From Blastocladiella emersonii ATCC 22665 (Eukaryota; Fungi; Blastocladiomycota): a DNA stretch of 64,000 nucleotides. Below are positions 15,688-53,320 of this stretch, piece by piece. Position numbers and translations under genes: made by a program. The notes under the pieces are model-generated. The model was not told the DNA's origin. It did no database searches and was given only the letters and a program-made list of their open reading frames with translations. The number at the start of each line of letters is the position of its first letter. Position 1 is the stretch's first letter. The stretch is from assembly GCA_025594325.1 (NCBI GenBank), contig JANHCV010000006.1, forward strand, positions 1,550,001 to 1,614,000, given 5' to 3'.

Positions 15688-15834
15688 CTACAAGACGCGT
15701 TTCGAAAACATGTGAGTGGCGCAACACGCCCTGAAACGAACGCAGTAGTGGCCAGGACCTCTTCTGTGGCCCACGAACGCACCATGAATGGAACTTTCAC
15801 CTCGCAACCATTCAATACGCACACAATCAGTATA

Positions 15835-16969
15835 TTACGTGATCGACGCGGCGACCTTGGCCACGAGCTCCACCATACGCCAGCAATACCCCTGCTCGTT
15901 ATCGTACCACGCGACGACCTTGAGCAGGCGTCCGTCCGTGACGGCCGTCGAGAGCGTGTCAACGATCGCCGACGCCGTATGCCCACGGAAATCCTCGCCA
16001 ACGAGCGGCTTCGTCTCGACCGCAAGGATCCCCTTGAGCGGCCCCTGCTCCGCGGCGCGCGCGAACATCGCGTTGACCTCGTCGGCGGTCACGTCGCGCT
16101 GGACTTCGAACACGGCGTCGGTGATGGACGCGTTGAGCAGCGGGACGCGGACGGCCATGCCGTGGATCTTGCCGTGGAGCTGCGGGAAGATGAGGCTGAT
16201 AGCGGACGCGGACCCCGTGGTGGTCGGGACGAGCGACGTCATGCACGAGCGCGCGCGGCGCAGGTCCTTGTGCGCCGTGTCAGCGATGGTCTGGGTGTTG
16301 GTGACGCAGTGGATGGTGGTGAATGAGGCGCGCGCGATCCCGACGTGCTCGAGGAGCACCTTGACGACGGGCGCGAGGCAGTTGGTCGTGCACGACGCGT
16401 TGGTCACGATCCAGTGGACTGCCGGGTTGTAGATGTGGTCGGTGACGCCCTGTTCGTAGATTTAGGTGTTAGTGCGCCGCGAGCTCGGCATGATCGAAGA
16501 ATGGGCGTACCATGACAATGTTGGCCGCCTCGGGGAACTTGCACGGCGCCGAGACCACAACCTTCTTGACGCCGTGCGCGAGGTACCGCTCGAGAACCTC
16601 CTTCGTCAGAAACTTGCCCGTACACTCGACGACGACGTCAATCTCGCCGACCTCGCTCCACGGGATCGCGTCGATCGTCGGTGCATCCGAGAACCCAATC
16701 CAGTGGCCGTTGACCTCAAACCCGTCGTAGTCGTCCGACGACACCGCCACGTCGTGCGTGCGCCACACGCCCTTGAGCGAGTCGTACTCGAGGAGGTGCG
16801 CGGCGGTCGCGGCGTCGCCCTTGAGCTCGTTGACGTGCACGACGCGGTACGGGTGCGTGGTGACGTCGCGGCCGTACGAGTCAAAGACGCCGCGCAGCCA
16901 CAGCCGGCCCATGCGGCCGAACCCGTTGATCAGGACGCGCGGTTGGCAAATCGGAGTATCAGTGTTCAT
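15835..16969 (-). CDS. gapdh: ArsJ-associated-type glyceraldehyde-3-phosphate dehydrogenase, 2 exons: 16969-16511, 16449-15835; 357 aa
   Basis: INGFGRMGR Rossmann motif, NASCTTNCLAP catalytic Cys and WYDNE. It also carries the subfamily-type stretches NELKGDAATAAHLLEYDS, TNTQTIADTAHKDLRRAR, SLVPTTTGSASAI and VRVPLLNASITDAVFEV. 61-nt GT-AG intron at 16510-16450. Confidence 0.9.
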
Positions 16970-17122
16970 TGCAATCAGGGTGCTTGGGCGGCGGGGAGAG
17001 CGAGCGAGGGCCGACGGCGAGCTGTTTGCCAAGGATGCCAACCGCCAACACGTTCTCGGCTCCGAAACCTTACGGGATCTTCCGAGGCCGCGGAAAAACC
17101 GGTGTCTATACAATTGAATATA

Positions 17123-18641
17123 TTACGAGCTCTGTGCTGGCGGCTCCTCGCCGGACACCGCCGCCGCGGCCTCGGCGAGCGGCACACCCTCCTCAACCGC
17201 CCCCTCCCTCGCCTCCCTCTCCTTTGCCTCGTCTGGATGCGCGAGCAACAAGTTGACGGCGTTACTCACGACCATAGCGCCGACGCTGAACCAGAGGCAC
17301 GCGGGGAGCCCAAACCCCGAGTAGATATACCCCGAGGCCACGGTGCCCGCAAGCCGGCCGACCGCGTTGGCGCAGTAATAGATGCCGACGTTGGCGGCCA
17401 CCTTGTCGCGGCCCGAGTACGCGACGATGAGGTAGCTGTGGAGCGACGACGCGACGCCAAACAGCGCGGCGAAGGCGCCGAGGCCCGCGATGAGGACGGC
17501 CGAGGTGCCGACGGCCGAGTCATCCACCGCGTACAGGAGCCCGGCGACGAGCGCGAGGACGGCGGCGAGGAGGCCGAGGACCGGGATCAGCGGCCTTGGC
17601 GAGTGCGGGTCCATCCCCGCGCGCTTGACGAGCTGGGGCGCGGCGCTCTGGACGACGCCGTAGACGATGACCCAGGTCGCGAGGAACGCGCCGGTCGAAA
17701 AGTACGCCCAGCCGAGCACGCCGCGGAGGAAGACGGGCAGGGGCACCTCGAACCACAGGTCGCGCGCGCCGAACAGGAACATGCGCGCGAGCGAGAGCCG
17801 GCGGATCTGCGGGTTCTGTTTGCGGACGATTTCGACGAGCGTTGTGCGTTTCGCGGACTTGCCGAGGTCGGCGCCGACGTACGCGAACGAGGCGACGAAG
17901 GTGAGGACCACGAGCGCGAGTAGGACTGAGAGTGCTGGGATGTAGCCCCATGTCACGAGCAGCGCGCCGAAAAAGTAGCCGACGCCCTTGACCGAGTTCT
18001 TGGCGCCCGTCAGCCGCGACACGAGGCGGAGGAGCGACGAGCCCGAGTCAGCGGGTTTCGCGGCCAGCTTGGTCACCGACTTGCCCGACATTTTGACGAG
18101 GTCTACGTGCGGCGGCAGGGTCAGTTGATGAGCGGGTGAGGGGTGTGAGCGCGTAGTACCCTTGGCGATGCCCGAGAGCCCCTGCGACGCAGCAATGTAC
18201 GCCGTCGTCGCGGCCTTGGACCACGCCGGGTCGAGCCCGTACAGCATGCCGATCCCCGCCATCTGCGACACGAGCCTGTCGAGCCCTCTTCCGTCAGCCC
18301 GCTATCCTCCCACAAACAACCCTGCAGACGCACCCAACGAGCAACAGCGGCCGCAACCCGATCCGCGACCCCATGACGCCGCCAAACAAGTTGGTGAACA
18401 CGCCGAGCAGCTCGTACAGCGTGAACATGAGCGCAATCTCGACGGGCGAGAACTTGCGAGTGAAGAGCTCGAGCAGTACGATCATGCGCAGCGCCGAGTC
18501 GCTCAGCGTGAAGGCGAGGTACGTGCACGCAATGGCGTAGAAGTTGGCCATGGACGTCGCCGGTGCCTTGGCCGGTGGCTCGCCGCCGTGCGCCATGGCC
18601 GAGTCGGATGCATTCAGTTGCGCAGCGTCGGTCGTGGTCAT
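17123..18641 (-). CDS. arsJ: Organoarsenical efflux MFS permease ArsJ, 3 exons: 18641-18334, 18275-18160, 18102-17123; 467 aa
   Basis: AFTLSDSALRMIVLL, YELLGVFTNLFGG, QGLSGIAKDLVKMSGKS, LTGAKNSVKGVGYFFG, ARMFLFGARDLWF, SSLHSYLIVAY and VGIYYCANAVGRLAGT match the ArsJ pattern I know from bacterial ars operons. The 58-nt and 57-nt introns restore the frame (1404 nt). Confidence 0.88.
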
Positions 18642-18833
18642 GGGCGATGATACATGTGCGAATTCGGGTCGGTACGGGGAGAGAATGGGGGTTCCCGGGC
18701 TGATCCGCTGCTGATCAAGCTCGGTCACGAACACGTTTTTCCGGCAGGCGGCGCCACACCTTGACCTTGAAAGCGCCGCGTTCGTCGAGCTCCAGGTCGA
18801 GCTCTCTCGCTCTCCCCTCCCCCAAAAATCAAG
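18642..18833. promoter_or_regulatory. Probable bidirectional promoter between arsJ and arsM (192 bp ATG to ATG)
   Basis: Head-to-head genes. Contains direct repeats GTCGAGCTC x2 (18784-18804) and CCTTGA x2; no TATA seen. Confidence 0.55.
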
Positions 18834-19975
18834 ATGGCTTCCATGAATCACCCCGACGGCGTCCTCGCAACGGTCAAGGACTACTACGGCCGCGTGCTGA
18901 GCACGTCCAAGGACCTCAAGACGAACGGTGCGCATCACCCCGCTCGCCTCCGCCGCCACCACCACTCACCCCTCCAATCGTAGCATGCGTGACGTCCAAG
19001 GCGCCACACCCGCTGATCCGCGCGGCGCTGGCCAAGGTGCCTCTCGCTGTGACGGAAAAGTACTACGGCTGCGGCTCGCCGGTCCCGCTGGGCATCGAGG
19101 GCCTGCACGTGCTGGACCTCGGGTCGGGCAGCGGGCAGGACTGCTACATCGCGGCGGCGCTCGTCGGTCCGACGGGGTCCGTGACGGGCGTCGACATGAC
19201 GGCCGCGCAGCTGGCCGTCGTGCGCGGGTCCGTGGCCGAGTACGCCGCGACGCTCGGGTACACGCCGAAACTCGCGTTCGTGCAGGGGTACATCGAGTGC
19301 CTCGAGTCCGCGGGGATCGCGGCGGGGTCCATGGACCTGGTCATCAGCAACTGCGTGGTGAACCTGTCGCCCGACAAGCCAGCGGTGCTGCGCGGCGTGG
19401 CGCGCGCGCTGCGCGAGGGCGGCGAGTTCTACTTCTCGGACGTGTACGCGGACCGGCGCCTCCCGCAAAGCGTGCGCGAGCACCCGGTCCTGTTCGGCGA
19501 GTGTCTCGGCGGCGCGCTGTACGTCGAGGACTTCCGGCGGCTGTGCCAGGCGGCGGGGTTCTCGGACCCGCGCGTGCTGAGTGTCGCGCCGATCGAGGTG
19601 CGCGACCCGGAGCTCACGGAGCTCGTCGGGAACACCAAGTTCTTCTCGATCACGTACCGGCTGTTCAAGCTCGCGGCGCTCGAGGATAAGTGCGAGGACT
19701 ACGGGCAGGTGGCCGTGTACCGCGGCACGATCCCGGGCCACGCGCACAGCTACGCGCTCGACGACCACCACGTGTTCGAGACGGGCAAGCCGATGCTCGT
19801 GTGCGGCAACTCGGCGGCCATGGTTCAGGAGTCGTGGCTCGGCAAGCATTTCGTGGTGACGGGCGACCGGTCGGTGCACTACGGGCTGTTCCCCGGGTGC
19901 GGCGACACGGTGACGAGCAAGGCGGCCGCGGCGTCGAGCGAGGGCGGCGGTGCCGTTGGCGGGTCGTGCTGCTGA
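18834..19975 (+). CDS. arsM: Arsenite S-adenosylmethionine methyltransferase (ArsM/AS3MT), 2 exons: 18834-18927, 18984-19975; 361 aa
   Basis: VKDYYGRVL...DLKTNAC, YYGCG, SAM motif VLDLGSGSGQDCY, ISNCVVNL and GECLGGALY. All four canonical arsenic-binding Cys positions are present; 56-nt intron; C-terminal GSCC. Confidence 0.92.
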
Positions 19976-20049
19976 AGCGAGCGTGGCTCTAGGGCGTAGG
20001 GCGAGTCGAGTGTGTCTCAGGAAGATGTATATACACATGAGCTTACTGC

Positions 20050-25664: not shown

Positions 25665-25943
25665 GGTGGATAGTGGTGCAAGGTGGAGTGGAGTTCAGTA
25701 ATGCAGTGCAGTCGAGGACTGTGCGTGGTTGGGGAGAGCAGGCGTCCGCGGTCTGTGCGACGCGGCGAGACTAGGCGAAAACTAGTCGCGGCGCGAAGCG
25801 CGACGCGCCACGTGCGCTGGCCCGTGACCTGGCGTGATTTCCCGACGCGTCGGAATTCGAGTCAGCGCTGACCACTGACGGTTGAGCGTATACGAGATGA
25901 GATGCCCGCCTCTATGCGGGTGTATTCAATCGCATGTGAACTC

Positions 25944-51301: not shown

Positions 51302-53320
51302 TCAAAGCCCCCATCCCTCCTCGTCGCCAACCAGCTCGACGTTGGGCCCTGTTGCCGTTTGCGAATCGCAGGCCCACCCTCGGACGCGCTCAATCGCACG
51401 GACCACGGCGCGGGACTCGCGATCAAAGCCGTCCGCGATGTGGCCAGCGACACGGGACGGCCGGAACAGGAAGTTAAGCTTGAGCAGCCTGGCCCAGCCC
51501 GAAGTCAGCGGGATCGGGAAGTGCAGCGTCCACGGCTCGTTGGTGAGAGGTCCGACAACAACGCGCTTGCCGACGTTCAAGTCCGTGAGATTCGGCGACT
51601 GTGCAAGCAAGCTGAGAGTGGCAGGGCTGATGGCCGCGAGCGGCACGTTCTTGCGCACAGTCTTGACACGAATTTCGAGGCTAAGGCTCGTGAGCACCGG
51701 GAACACGCGGGGAAGCTCAAAGTTCCACGGAAACGCAGGGTGCGTGTCGGGTTCTTTGACGATGTGGAGACGTTTGAGTGCACCGACGCGTACAAGCAGA
51801 TCGGCATAGCTGAACCGCTTGACGTTGACGGAGAGTGAAGTAAGCTGATCAAGCACTAGAGCTTGAGCGTTCAAGAAAACATCGGGAACGCGGCTGAGGT
51901 CCACCTCGCGGAGGCGAGGCAGGTAGGCGGGCAACCCTACCGGAATGAACGGCCGGTTTCCCGCAAAGTATTCGGCCTGGTTACCGGTGTGAACGACCGA
52001 AGGCCACGTTACGATAGGCTGATTGTCTAAGTTGGTAGACGTTCCACAATCATCGACGGTAAGCTTGACCAAGCTGGGAAGCCTGAAAGCCAGGCGCAGC
52101 GCCATGACACTGTCGGATGACACGGTGATTTCTTCGAGTGAAGAAAGTGTGCGCAGGCTCGTACAGTCGTCAGCGGTAATAGCGCGCATCGTAGCCTCGT
52201 TTGCTAGAGTCAAGTTGAGCTGGCGCATACGGAAGAAGCCTGTAAGTTGACCAATCGGGAGATCAATGGAGCTGTCGACCGAGGCAACAGACGACTCGAG
52301 CCGTGGAAATCGAACACCGTCAAGGGCGACATGCAGTTCGCCGCCCTTGAGCGACCGCAAGTTACACGTCGCGTCCGGTTGCATGTGCGCGAGAAACACG
52401 TGTGCCGAATTCATTTTGAGATCGAGGGACAAGAGCTGCGGCGGAAGAGAGCGCGGTAGCCGCTCGAGCTGTTCGTCTGTAATTCCACGCGCGATGCCAT
52501 CGAGTGGGTGCGAGGAAAAAGTGCCTTGAGTCGAGCTGCGAGCGTCATCGAGGTGCAGTGTGAGCATTGCGAGCGTGGGATAGTTGGTAAGCAGCGAGCC
52601 AAGCACGGGGAGAGCAATATCCGAGACCTCGATTGAGAGCGACTTGACCGCGGGAAGGAGTGGGAGCTGGCGCGCGATACACGGCGAGGATTGCGGAGCC
52701 GAGGCTTGCGAGCGATGGTTGGGATAGCAACAGTACTCCTCGATCAGCTTGACGTCGGTGGCGCGCGGAAGCGTGAGGCCATCCAGTGCGCTCGCGTCGC
52801 TGGCACACAGGAGGTCCAGCTTGAGGTACGTGATTCGTTCGGCAACGAGATCGAGGATCGTCCGCAAAGTTTCTCGCGAGTCATAATTCGAGAGCTCGAG
52901 GCGCTGGAGGCCCGTCGCGTAGCTGAGAAGCTGGCAAACGGCAGGCAGCGCGTGCATACGGCGAACGCTGTGGCCGTGGTCGGAACGAAACAGCTGAAGC
53001 TTGCGAATGTAGGCCGCGTTCACGGCAAGACGACTGGTCGAGTTGACGTAGAGTCCGGTCAGCGCCACCGTGAAGTGACTCGAAACGAGTCCGTTACCGT
53101 CATCCGAAGCGTTGCATTTGGTGAGGCGGATCGAGTGTGCAAGCTCGCGCCCGGCAATCCCAAAGAGCGACCGGTTCGCGCGCCCGAACGCGACGAGGGA
53201 GGCGTAGTCGGGGTCCCACGCCGCCTTCGCCCCGCTTGCGACAACGCGCCGGGCAATGATGCGCAGAACGTCATCCGGCAGAGTGCATAAAGTCAGAGGT
53301 GTTTCATTAGCTTCGTTCAT
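51302..53320 (-). CDS. F-box/LRR-like family member, intact, 672 aa
   Basis: LTLCTLPDDVLRIIA...SLVAFGRANRSL F-box-like start, LRR-like body and family C-terminus PWTLHFP...RPSRVAGH...ELVGDEEGWGL. Confidence 0.75.
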   Translation of the reverse strand: MNEANETPLTLCTLPDDVLRIIARRVVASGAKAAWDPDYASLVAFGRANRSLFGIAGRELAHSIRLTKCNASDDGNGLVSSHFTVALTGLYVNSTSRLAVNAAYIRKLQLFRSDHGHSVRRMHALPAVCQLLSYATGLQRLELSNYDSRETLRTILDLVAERITYLKLDLLCASDASALDGLTLPRATDVKLIEEYCCYPNHRSQASAPQSSPCIARQLPLLPAVKSLSIEVSDIALPVLGSLLTNYPTLAMLTLHLDDARSSTQGTFSSHPLDGIARGITDEQLERLPRSLPPQLLSLDLKMNSAHVFLAHMQPDATCNLRSLKGGELHVALDGVRFPRLESSVASVDSSIDLPIGQLTGFFRMRQLNLTLANEATMRAITADDCTSLRTLSSLEEITVSSDSVMALRLAFRLPSLVKLTVDDCGTSTNLDNQPIVTWPSVVHTGNQAEYFAGNRPFIPVGLPAYLPRLREVDLSRVPDVFLNAQALVLDQLTSLSVNVKRFSYADLLVRVGALKRLHIVKEPDTHPAFPWNFELPRVFPVLTSLSLEIRVKTVRKNVPLAAISPATLSLLAQSPNLTDLNVGKRVVVGPLTNEPWTLHFPIPLTSGWARLLKLNFLFRPSRVAGHIADGFDRESRAVVRAIERVRGWACDSQTATGPNVELVGDEEGWGL

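What the first reader, a model, noticed from the sequence alone, without database searches (positions are those of the whole stretch)
15835..19975. Eukaryotic arsenic-detoxification gene cluster: arsenate-type GAPDH + ArsJ + ArsM, all with spliceosomal introns
Seen: three adjacent genes in 4.1 kb. arsJ and gapdh are in tandem on the minus strand (153 bp from stop to ATG), and arsM is head-to-head with arsJ (192 bp). They carry four GT-AG introns of 56-61 nt in the host style, and GC-rich codon usage like the core genes, so this is not bacterial contamination. Established: in bacterial ars operons (characterised in Pseudomonas aeruginosa DK2) a dedicated GAPDH makes 1-arseno-3-phosphoglycerate from arsenate and ArsJ exports it, while ArsM methylates As(III). 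Typical fungal arsenic defence is instead Acr2/Acr3-based. Inference: this fungus has a two-arm cluster covering As(V) by GAPDH/ArsJ efflux and As(III) by methylation, probably seeded by horizontal transfer and then intronised. I am not aware of this arrangement being described in fungi, but that needs a search.
Basis: partly seen in the sequence, partly recalled or inferred. Interest (0 to 1): 0.93.

Follow-up and report, generated by a model that had tools for sequence, protein, structure and literature searches.

The report
Fungal arsenate-efflux and arsenite-methylation gene cluster
The water mould-like fungus Blastocladiella emersonii keeps three arsenic-defence genes side by side (a special GAPDH, the ArsJ exporter and an arsenite methyltransferase). 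This is a fungal version of a gene neighbourhood already described in green algae, inherited from old ancestors rather than recently taken from bacteria.

Summary
There are three adjacent intron-bearing genes, with four GT-AG introns of 61, 58, 57 and 56 nt and spacers of 153 and 192 bp. My gene models are identical to NCBI proteins H9P43_005836, _005837 and _005838 of Blastocladiella emersonii ATCC 22665.

The gene identities hold:
- The GAPDH sits inside the ArsJ-associated GAPDH clade and is far from glycolytic fungal GAPDH.
- The MFS protein is a full-length ArsJ.
- The methyltransferase is a eukaryote-type AS3MT/ArsM with all four catalytic cysteines.

The evolutionary reading needs correcting. 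ArsJ is widespread in Blastocladiomycota, Chytridiomycota and Glomeromycotina. It forms one eukaryotic clade with green-algal ArsJ, and it shares intron positions across blastoclad genera. So it is an old resident, not a recent transfer. ArsM has a separate, eukaryote-wide history.

Clustering is patchy. B. britannica keeps only the arsM/arsJ head-to-head pair. Paraphysoderma keeps only gapdh-arsJ. In the other six fungal species examined, arsJ has neither partner within 4-10 kb.

The novelty claim is weakened by prior work. An ArsJ-GAPDH(-PGK) neighbourhood, with arsenate-sensitive arsJ and PGK3 mutants, was published for green algae in 2020. I found no paper describing it in fungi. I rate it a new variant of a known kind, of moderate interest. 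Function is inferred from homology; no RNA data were available.

The parts
15835..16969 (-). ArsJ-associated-type GAPDH gene (H9P43_005836, 357 aa): exon 1 16969..16511, intron 16510..16450 (61 nt), exon 2 16449..15835
   Evidence: Model built and identical to P0121. NF033735 scores 451.6 bits against a cut-off of 450. Trees. Catalytic motif SCTTNC starts at residue 172 and TTIHC at 197.
16970..17122 (-). 153-bp spacer between the arsJ stop and the gapdh ATG. It must hold the arsJ 3' end and the gapdh promoter and leader. It contains the leader motif at 16984-17008.
17123..18641 (-). ArsJ MFS permease gene (H9P43_005837, 467 aa): exon 1 18641..18334, intron 18333..18276 (58 nt), exon 2 18275..18160, intron 18159..18103 (57 nt), exon 3 18102..17123
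   Evidence: Model built and identical to P0001. NF033734 scores 385.2 bits over profile positions 2-389 of 392. Tree. Intron positions shared with Allomyces, B. britannica and Catenaria.
18642..18833 (.). 192-bp divergent (bidirectional) intergenic region between the arsJ and arsM start codons
   Evidence: The same head-to-head arrangement occurs in B. britannica, where the spacer is 251 bp and has no alignable conserved block apart from low-complexity sequence.
18834..19975 (+). Arsenite S-adenosylmethionine methyltransferase gene (ArsM/AS3MT type, H9P43_005838, 361 aa): exon 1 18834..18927, intron 18928..18983 (56 nt), exon 2 18984..19975
   Evidence: Model built and identical to P0241. Scores 457 bits against the solved Chlamydomonas ArsM 5evj. 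The cysteines lie in the motifs TNAC, YYGC, ISNC and FGEC, and the SAM motif is LDLGSGSG.
16984..17008 (-). Pyrimidine-rich leader motif upstream of the gapdh ATG (core CTCGCTCTCCCC), 84% identical over 25 nt to the arsM leader
   Evidence: (pair I4)
18802..18826 (+). The same leader motif upstream of the arsM ATG
18676..18683 (-). CTCTCCCC core of the motif in the arsJ leader

Best explanation
This is a native, nuclear three-gene arsenic-detoxification cluster of Blastocladiella emersonii.

Proposed mechanism (inferred from homology):
- The dedicated GAPDH paralogue uses arsenate in place of phosphate and makes 1-arseno-3-phosphoglycerate from glyceraldehyde-3-phosphate.
- The MFS permease ArsJ exports this unstable compound, which removes As(V) without reducing it.
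- The divergently transcribed AS3MT-type ArsM methylates As(III) with S-adenosylmethionine.

Proposed history:
- gapdh and arsJ descend from an old bacterial-type pair that has been vertically inherited in early-diverging fungi for a long time.
- arsM is the eukaryote-wide AS3MT.
- The three-gene arrangement was assembled or retained within the Blastocladiella lineage. Relatives keep only sub-pairs or have the genes dispersed.

Shown here: gene structure, family placement, phylogeny, intron conservation and synteny.
Inferred only: enzymatic activity, export, arsenic induction and co-regulation.
For: Structure and host origin.

GAPDH:
- The best NCBIfam model is NF033735, ArsJ-associated GAPDH: 451.6 bits against a cut-off of 450. 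The Chlamydomonas GAPDH3 of the published arsenic neighbourhood scores 458.7.
- It scores only 208.8 bits on the E. coli GapA/eukaryote-like model, and about 210 bits against yeast-type structures versus 312 for Geobacillus.
- In trees it lies inside a 100/99* clade that holds all named bacterial ArsJ-associated GAPDHs and Chlamydomonas Cre07.g354200.

ArsJ:
- It matches NF033734 over its full length at 385 bits. The Chlamydomonas ArsJ scores 380. The arsJ mutant of Chlamydomonas (Cre07.g354150) is arsenate-sensitive (PMC7826186).
- In the tree, 30 named eukaryotic ArsJ form one side of a 100* branch against 78 bacterial ArsJ. Blastoclad, chytrid and Glomeromycotina clades are each recovered.

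Long residence in the lineage:
- ArsJ intron positions at alignment columns 144 and 188 are shared by B. emersonii, Allomyces and B. britannica. Catenaria shares column 188.
- The GAPDH intron position is shared with Paraphysoderma.

ArsM:
- It scores 457 bits against the solved Chlamydomonas ArsM, with all four cysteines conserved.
- All named top hits are eukaryotes.

Non-random linkage:
- The arsM/arsJ head-to-head pair is conserved in B. britannica.
- gapdh-arsJ adjacency is present in Paraphysoderma and in a eukaryote-like metagenome contig.

Biochemical precedent: the P. aeruginosa DK2 gapdh/arsJ pair, as summarised in PMC6205960 and PMC9454679.
Against: - There are no expression or splice data. 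No RNA run was listed for this locus, so induction by arsenic and co-regulation are untested.
- ArsJ scores just below the curated bacterial equivalog cut-off (385 against 400).
- No sequence determinant is known that makes an ArsJ-associated GAPDH arsenate-specific.
- The cluster is not conserved. In Catenaria the two genes lie on different contigs. In Allomyces, two chytrids and two Glomeromycotina arsJ stands alone. Linkage is therefore not required for function.
- The genome is very compact, so short spacers alone mean little. There are 74 bp between the arsM and P5CR stops.
- The shared leader motif also occurs upstream of unrelated genes, so it is not evidence for arsenic-specific control.
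Confidence: 0.7

Rival explanations
1. Recent horizontal transfer of a bacterial ars operon segment into B. emersonii, followed by rapid gain of introns and amelioration of composition.
For: The GAPDH is 62-67% identical to bacterial ArsJ-associated GAPDHs over its C-terminal domain. The gene pair is a bacterial operon unit.
Against: - ArsJ and GAPDH orthologues occur in other blastoclad genera, and intron positions are shared.
- ArsJ is also found in chytrids and Glomeromycotina, in a single eukaryotic clade.
- GC3 is indistinguishable from the neighbouring genes.
- ArsM is of eukaryotic type.
- The gene order arsJ then gapdh is the reverse of the order in Paraphysoderma.
Confidence: 0.03
2. 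The three genes each work in arsenic defence, but their adjacency in B. emersonii is a neutral accident of genome rearrangement in a compact genome, with no shared regulation or selective value.
For: Linkage is absent in Catenaria, Allomyces, chytrids and Glomeromycotina. There is no synteny beyond the ars genes. The shared leader motif is not specific to the cluster.
Against: Three functionally related genes in a row are very unlikely by chance in a genome of thousands of genes. Two different sub-pairs recur in relatives: arsM/arsJ in B. britannica and gapdh-arsJ in Paraphysoderma. gapdh-arsJ linkage also recurs in green algae and in a metagenomic eukaryote-like contig.
Confidence: 0.12
3. 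The GAPDH/ArsJ pair has a role unrelated to arsenic in this fungus. It could, for example, export a phosphorylated glycolytic intermediate, or the GAPDH could be a second metabolic isozyme. Only ArsM would then be an arsenic gene.
For: Any GAPDH can in principle use phosphate. No arsenate-specific residues are known. No functional data exist for fungi.
Against: - Family-level placement is with ArsJ-associated GAPDH and ArsJ.
- The arsJ mutant of Chlamydomonas, whose ArsJ belongs to the same clade, is arsenate-sensitive.
- Physical linkage to arsM here, and arsJ-arsM linkage in B. britannica, point to arsenic.
Confidence: 0.1
4. Bacterial contamination or mis-assembly.
For: None beyond the bacterial affinity of two of the gene families.
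Against: - There are four spliceosomal introns with branch motifs.
- The contig is 2.02 Mb.
- Host-like GC3.
- Eukaryotic neighbours.
- Orthologues with shared introns occur in related fungi.
Confidence: 0.01

Closest known systems
ArsJ-type arsenic gene neighbourhood of green algae (ArsJ - GAPDH3 - PGK3/PGK4; Foflonker and Blaby-Haas 2020, PMC7826186)
   Same: It is a eukaryotic, intron-bearing, physically linked pair of ArsJ and an ArsJ-associated-type GAPDH. The window's proteins score like the Chlamydomonas ones on the same models: ArsJ 385 against 380, GAPDH 452 against 459. The ArsJ proteins fall in one eukaryotic clade.
   Different: The host is a fungus. No PGK-like partner lies in the immediate flanks, which are MatE and P5C reductase. 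An AS3MT-type arsM is joined head-to-head, whereas in the algae arsM is present in the genome but outside the neighbourhood. The gene order differs.
gapdh-arsJ pair of bacterial ars operons (Pseudomonas aeruginosa DK2; Chen et al. 2016, as summarised in PMC6205960 and PMC9454679)
   Same: The same two protein families are involved, and the GAPDH lies inside the same clade as the bacterial ArsJ-associated GAPDHs. The presumed mechanism is the same: formation of 1-arseno-3-phosphoglycerate and its export.
   Different: Here they are separate monocistronic-looking eukaryotic genes with introns. The order is arsJ then gapdh. There is no ArsR, ArsC or ArsB context. ArsJ is on a long eukaryote-specific branch and scores below the bacterial equivalog cut-off.
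AS3MT/ArsM group I of eukaryotes (animals, SAR, green algae, chytrids, Glomeromycota; Palmgren et al. 2017, PMC5398495). Solved structure: Chlamydomonas ArsM 5evj.
   Same: Scores 457 bits against 5evj. The four cysteines, the SAM motif and a C-terminal cysteine pair are conserved. The nearest named relatives are all eukaryotes.
   Different: It is physically linked to arsJ. I did not find this linkage described.
Saccharomyces ACR/ARR cluster (ACR1/Yap8 - ACR2 - ACR3)
   Same: It is a compact eukaryotic arsenic-resistance cluster that includes a divergent promoter.
   Different: The proteins and chemistry are unrelated: As(V) reduction followed by As(III) efflux. No homology is involved. This is an analogy only, and this item rests on my own background knowledge.
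Pteris vittata GAPC1 / OCT4 / GSTF1 arsenate tolerance system (Cai et al. 2019, cited in PMC7826186 and PMC9454679)
   Same: The logic is the same: GAPDH arsenylates and a transporter moves the product.
   Different: It is convergent. It uses a plant cytosolic GAPC and an OCT transporter, not ArsJ-family proteins.

Membership tests
ArsJ-associated GAPDH (NCBIfam NF033735) | Whole-protein score at or above the curated cut-off of 450 bits, and higher than for any other GAPDH model | tested here: met
   451.6 bits over profile positions 2-323 of 323. The next model, PRK08955, scores 417.7, below its cut-off of 563. The margin over the cut-off is small. Catenaria scores 410 (below) and Paraphysoderma 484 (above).
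ArsJ-associated GAPDH (NCBIfam NF033735) | Phylogenetic placement with ArsJ-linked GAPDHs, apart from other GAPDH subfamilies | tested here: met
   It lies inside a 100/99* clade with all named bacterial ArsJ-associated GAPDHs and Chlamydomonas GAPDH3, separated from nine other GAPDH representatives. The 133-row tree gives the same result.
ArsJ-associated GAPDH (NCBIfam NF033735) | Gene adjacent to arsJ | tested here: met
   It lies 153 bp downstream of arsJ on the same strand.
ArsJ-associated GAPDH (NCBIfam NF033735) | Intact GAPDH catalytic Cys and His and the NAD-binding glycine motif | tested here: met
   SCTTNC starts at 172, TTIHC at 197 and NGFGRMGR at 15.
ArsJ-associated GAPDH (NCBIfam NF033735) | Forms 1-arseno-3-phosphoglycerate and confers As(V) resistance together with ArsJ | not testable with these tools
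   Needs an enzyme assay and heterologous expression.
ArsJ organoarsenical efflux MFS permease (NCBIfam NF033734) | Full-length match to the ArsJ profile as the only strong MFS subfamily hit | tested here: met
   385.2 bits over profile positions 2-389 of 392. No other family matched at E<=1e-10.
ArsJ organoarsenical efflux MFS permease (NCBIfam NF033734) | Score at or above the curated equivalog cut-off of 400 bits | tested here: not met
   385.2 against 400. The cut-off was set for prokaryotic annotation. Chlamydomonas ArsJ scores 380, other fungal ArsJ score 362-404 and a bacterial ArsJ scores 620. I read this as a divergent eukaryotic subclade of ArsJ, not as another family.
ArsJ organoarsenical efflux MFS permease (NCBIfam NF033734) | Groups with ArsJ proteins in a tree, and is linked to an ars-type GAPDH | tested here: met
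   Its only other rows are named or unnamed ArsJ-like proteins, and no other MFS subfamily was sampled, so the placement shows the subclade within ArsJ-like proteins rather than exclusion of other MFS families. Adjacency is shown.
ArsJ organoarsenical efflux MFS permease (NCBIfam NF033734) | Exports 1-arseno-3-phosphoglycerate | not testable with these tools
   Needs transport assays.
Arsenite methyltransferase ArsM/AS3MT | Four conserved cysteines of the As(III) binding and relay site, plus the SAM-binding glycine motif | tested here: met
   The cysteines lie in the motifs TNAC, YYGC, ISNC and FGEC. The SAM motif LDLGSGSG starts at residue 75. All align to the cysteines of the solved Chlamydomonas ArsM.
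Arsenite methyltransferase ArsM/AS3MT | Strong full-length similarity to an experimentally solved or characterised ArsM | tested here: met
   5evj (Chlamydomonas ArsM) scores 457 bits over residues 7-357. Cyanidioschyzon ArsM 4fr0 scores 292 bits.
Arsenite methyltransferase ArsM/AS3MT | Passes the bacterial NCBIfam ArsM model cut-off (NF008823, 263 bits) | tested here: not met
   159.8 bits. This is expected for the eukaryotic AS3MT branch, because the model covers only the bacterial subfamily and about 230 residues.
Eukaryotic ArsJ-type gene neighbourhood (green algae, PMC7826186) | ArsJ and GAPDH3 encoded by proximal genes | tested here: met
   with the definition taken.
Eukaryotic ArsJ-type gene neighbourhood (green algae, PMC7826186) | A PGK-like (PGK3/PGK4) neighbour | tested here: not met
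   The immediate neighbours are a MatE transporter and P5C reductase. The rest of the window was not scanned for PGK.

The most novel reading that the evidence does not exclude
Early-diverging fungi (Blastocladiomycota, Chytridiomycota and the arbuscular-mycorrhizal Glomeromycotina) retain a reduction-independent arsenate-efflux pathway (ars-type GAPDH plus ArsJ). No Dikarya sequence appeared among the 120 best ArsJ hits. In the Blastocladiella lineage, selection has pulled this old bacterial-derived pair together with the eukaryotic AS3MT into one co-regulated unit around a bidirectional arsM/arsJ promoter. That would be a case of de novo assembly of a detoxification cluster from genes of different origin. 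The algal clusters assembled independently and recruited PGK instead.
Probability: 0.35. Interest if true: 0.6.

Novelty: new variant of a known kind. Interest (0 to 1): 0.45.

Why it matters
Textbook fungal arsenic defence is the yeast Acr2/Acr3 route. A recent survey of 16 arsenic genes in 670 microbial genomes did not include arsJ or gapdh, and a 2026 fungal paper still calls ArsJ a bacterial family.

If ArsJ with its dedicated GAPDH works in zoosporic and mycorrhizal fungi, these fungi can expel arsenate without first making the more toxic arsenite. This is relevant to arsenic cycling in water and soil, and to arsenic handling in mycorrhizal plants.

The patchy clustering across blastoclads also offers a small, tractable case of how eukaryotic gene clusters form and decay. 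One species has all three genes together, two have different sub-pairs, and in the others the genes are dispersed or arsJ stands alone.

The finding does not open a new category. The mechanism and a eukaryotic precedent are already published.

Tried and rejected
- **RNA evidence.** No RNA run was listed for the cluster or for the GAPDH gene. Only three DNA runs of the probable source sample were listed. I therefore did not use read laying. Splicing rests on frame restoration, homology across the junctions and identity with the NCBI models.
- **Conserved promoter element.** The arsM/arsJ intergenic regions of B. emersonii and B. britannica do not align beyond low-complexity sequence. The cluster's leader motif is absent from the nine related loci fetched up to that point.
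- **Arsenic-specific element.** The leader motif CTCTCCCC is enriched: 8 matches against 2.05 expected, three of them in the cluster leaders. It also lies 47-74 nt upstream of two unrelated ORFs. I therefore read it as a general leader or core-promoter feature.
- **Single eukaryotic origin of the GAPDH.** It was neither recovered nor rejected (AU p = 0.21).
- **Partner GAPDH in chytrids and Glomeromycotina.** I could not settle this. The word-index search was saturated by bacterial hits. The 50%-identity representative library has no names. The Atlas search returned only bacterial clusters. No GAPDH lies within 4-10 kb of arsJ in Rhizophagus, Gigaspora, Geranomyces or Fimicolochytrium.
- **Synteny.** There is none between the window and the related loci beyond the ars genes.
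- **Primary paper.** Chen et al. 2016 (PMC4992400) is not held in the library, so I cite it through secondary sources.

Full report
**What is in the sequence**

The region 15835-19975 holds three genes, exactly as described.
- On the minus strand, an MFS permease gene (18641..17123, three exons) is followed 153 bp later by a GAPDH gene (16969..15835, two exons).
- On the plus strand, 192 bp from the permease start codon, a methyltransferase gene runs from 18834 to 19975 (two exons).
- The four introns are 58, 57, 61 and 56 nt long. Each begins with GT and ends with AG, and each carries a CTRAC/CTCAC branch-like motif 15-19 nt before the acceptor.
- Removing the introns restores reading frames whose products are identical to three consecutive NCBI proteins of Blastocladiella emersonii ATCC 22665: H9P43_005836, _005837 and _005838.
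- The products align without gaps across the junctions to intronless bacterial homologues.
- GC3 is 0.90-0.95, the same as the neighbouring MatE and P5C-reductase genes.
- The contig is 2.02 Mb long.

**What the three proteins are**

GAPDH:
- Its best match is the NCBIfam model for ArsJ-associated GAPDH, at 451.6 bits against a cut-off of 450. It falls below the cut-offs of every other GAPDH model, and scores only 209 bits on the GapA/eukaryote-like model.
- Among solved structures it is nearest to bacterial and chloroplast-type enzymes, not to fungal glycolytic ones.
- I built a 133-row tree with representatives of the whole family, and a careful 39-row tree. In both, it lies inside a fully supported clade (100/99) with all named bacterial ArsJ-associated GAPDHs.
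- That clade also holds Chlamydomonas Cre07.g354200, the GAPDH3 of the published algal arsenic neighbourhood.

Permease:
- It matches the ArsJ profile end to end at 385 bits, and no other MFS subfamily comes close.
- The score is just under the bacterial equivalog cut-off of 400. The Chlamydomonas ArsJ scores 380, and the arsJ mutant of Chlamydomonas is arsenate-sensitive.

Methyltransferase:
- It is an AS3MT-type ArsM, scoring 457 bits against the solved Chlamydomonas ArsM.
- The four cysteines, the SAM motif and a C-terminal cysteine pair are conserved.

**Evolutionary history**

ArsJ is not special to this fungus. Close homologues occur in these groups:
- Blastocladiomycota: Allomyces, Catenaria, B. 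britannica, Paraphysoderma.
- Chytridiomycota: many genera.
- Gonapodya.
- Glomeromycotina: nearly every sampled genus.
- Green algae.

In the tree, all 30 named eukaryotic ArsJ sit on one side of a 100% supported branch, opposite 78 bacterial ArsJ. Nine unnamed metagenomic sequences sit with them, and at least one of those lies on a eukaryote-like contig. Blastoclads, chytrids and Glomeromycotina each form their own clade.

Intron positions point the same way:
- Two ArsJ intron positions are shared by B. emersonii, Allomyces and B. britannica. Catenaria shares one of them.
- The GAPDH intron position is shared with Paraphysoderma.

The blastoclad GAPDHs form a 100/99 clade. So gapdh and arsJ are old residents of this fungal lineage. 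Any bacterial origin lies deep in the past. This agrees with the remark in the red-algal paper that eukaryotic arsJ is monophyletic.

For the GAPDH, a single eukaryotic origin is neither recovered nor rejected (AU p = 0.21).

ArsM has a different history. Its nearest named relatives are B. britannica (77%), followed at 60-70% identity by green algae, stramenopiles, rhizarians, dinoflagellates, Diplonema and chytrids. This is the 'group I' AS3MT of Palmgren et al..

**Conservation of the cluster**

I examined the arsJ loci of eight other fungal species, plus the Catenaria gapdh locus. I used both the called genes and tblastn with the three window proteins.

| Species | Arrangement found |
|---|---|
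| B. britannica | arsM and arsJ in the same head-to-head arrangement. A tRNA-synthetase gene stands where gapdh would be. |
| Paraphysoderma | gapdh then arsJ in tandem, the reverse order of the window. No arsM nearby. |
| Catenaria | arsJ and gapdh on different contigs |
| Allomyces (both copies) | arsJ with neither partner nearby |
| Geranomyces | arsJ with neither partner nearby |
| Fimicolochytrium | arsJ with neither partner nearby |
| Rhizophagus | arsJ with neither partner nearby |
| Gigaspora | arsJ with neither partner nearby |

'Nearby' means within the 4-10 kb of flanking sequence available on each side. No flanking synteny links any of these loci to the window. Among the nine fungal species looked at, the three-gene arrangement is specific to B. 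emersonii, while two different sub-pairs recur in relatives. This argues that the linkage is not accidental. It also shows that linkage is not needed for the genes to persist.

**Regulatory hints**

- A 25-nt pyrimidine-rich stretch (core CTCGCTCTCCCC) lies just upstream of both the gapdh and arsM start codons, in the sense orientation. It is found nowhere else in the window as an exact 12-mer.
- Its 8-nt core also lies in the arsJ leader.
- The core is enriched in the window, with 8 matches against 2 expected. However, it also sits 47-74 nt upstream of two unrelated ORFs, and it is absent from the related loci fetched up to that point.
- I therefore take it as a general leader or core-promoter feature, with at most a local duplication between the gapdh and arsM leaders.
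- The intergenic regions of the two Blastocladiella species do not align.
- No RNA run was listed, so expression, induction and transcript structure are untested.

**Mechanism**

The dedicated GAPDH arsenylates glyceraldehyde-3-phosphate and ArsJ exports the product, while ArsM methylates As(III).

Shown here: gene structure, family membership, conserved catalytic residues and recurrent linkage. Inferred only: the activities themselves and arsenic responsiveness.

Rivals:
- Neutral adjacency without co-regulation (0.12).
- A role for the GAPDH/ArsJ pair unrelated to arsenic (0.10).
- Recent bacterial transfer (0.03).
- Contamination (0.01).

**Comparison with what is known, and novelty**

- The biochemical system was defined in Pseudomonas aeruginosa DK2 (summarised).
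- A eukaryotic, intron-bearing ArsJ-GAPDH3 neighbourhood, usually with a PGK-like third gene, was described in green algae in 2020. That study also reported arsenate-sensitive arsJ and pgk3 mutants, and arsM lies outside the neighbourhood there.
- Six full-text searches returned no paper that describes ArsJ or an ArsJ-linked GAPDH in fungi.
- A 2024 survey of fungal arsenic genes omits them, and a 2026 fungal paper calls ArsJ bacterial.
- Database annotation has already labelled at least one fungal protein (Rhizophagus clarus) as ArsJ.

The finding is therefore a new variant of a known kind. It is a fungal ArsJ/GAPDH neighbourhood that has arsM in place of PGK as its third member.

I score interest at 0.45. 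The finding is real, neatly organised and apparently unreported for fungi. It may bear on arsenate handling in zoosporic and mycorrhizal fungi. However, neither the mechanism nor the eukaryotic clustering is new, and nothing here is functionally tested.

Noticed in passing
window 18638-18655 (minus strand): The arsJ leader holds a five-codon upstream ORF (ATG TAT CAT CGC CCA TGA). Its stop codon overlaps the arsJ start codon in an ATGA arrangement. If the transcript starts upstream of it, this could impose termination-reinitiation control on ArsJ translation.
   Followed up: no
window 16984-17008 (-), 18802-18826 (+), 18676-18683 (-); also 25731-25738 (-) and 52607-52614 (-): The pyrimidine-rich motif (G)CTCTCCCC lies 24-74 nt upstream of start codons. 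It is found in all three cluster genes and in at least two unrelated ORFs, with 8 matches in the window against 2.05 expected. It is probably a general leader or core-promoter element of this fungus.
   Followed up: partly
L010:4399-7143 (JGI metagenome 3300025006): An unidentified contig that looks eukaryotic: it has many short unannotated ORFs, and its ArsJ is split into two called genes. It carries an intronless ars-type GAPDH (58% identical to the window's) divergent from an ArsJ. That ArsJ branches at the base of the eukaryotic ArsJ clade.
   Followed up: partly
L003:6015-7097 versus window 18834-19975: The B. britannica arsM is intronless, whereas the B. emersonii orthologue has a 56-nt intron after codon 31. 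This is an intron gain or loss within the genus.
   Followed up: partly
ArsJ tree: B. britannica ArsJ groups with Catenaria (99*) rather than with B. emersonii. The cause could be that the genus Blastocladiella is not monophyletic, or that the ArsJ copies are old paralogues.
   Followed up: no
L009:8001-9151 (Catenaria gapdh) and L008:7645-9091 (Paraphysoderma arsJ): Two public gene models look wrong. The Catenaria GAPDH model lacks 13 conserved residues exactly at the intron site shared by the other blastoclads. The Paraphysoderma ArsJ is split into a 100-aa 'gene' and a truncated 334-aa gene.
   Followed up: partly
window 15688-15834 and 19976-20049: Convergent neighbouring genes end only 147 bp apart (MatE and gapdh) and 74 bp apart (arsM and P5C reductase). 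Their 3' untranslated regions must be very short or must overlap. The genome is very compact here.
   Followed up: no
L003:7098-7348: The arsM/arsJ intergenic region of B. britannica is largely a (CTG)n/(CAG)n microsatellite. B. emersonii has no such repeat.
   Followed up: no
L001 and L013 (Allomyces macrogynus): The two Allomyces arsJ copies lie in duplicated blocks with the same neighbours (sugar transporter, Atg3-like, Arf, RICTOR). This fits the known large-scale duplication of that genome.
   Followed up: no
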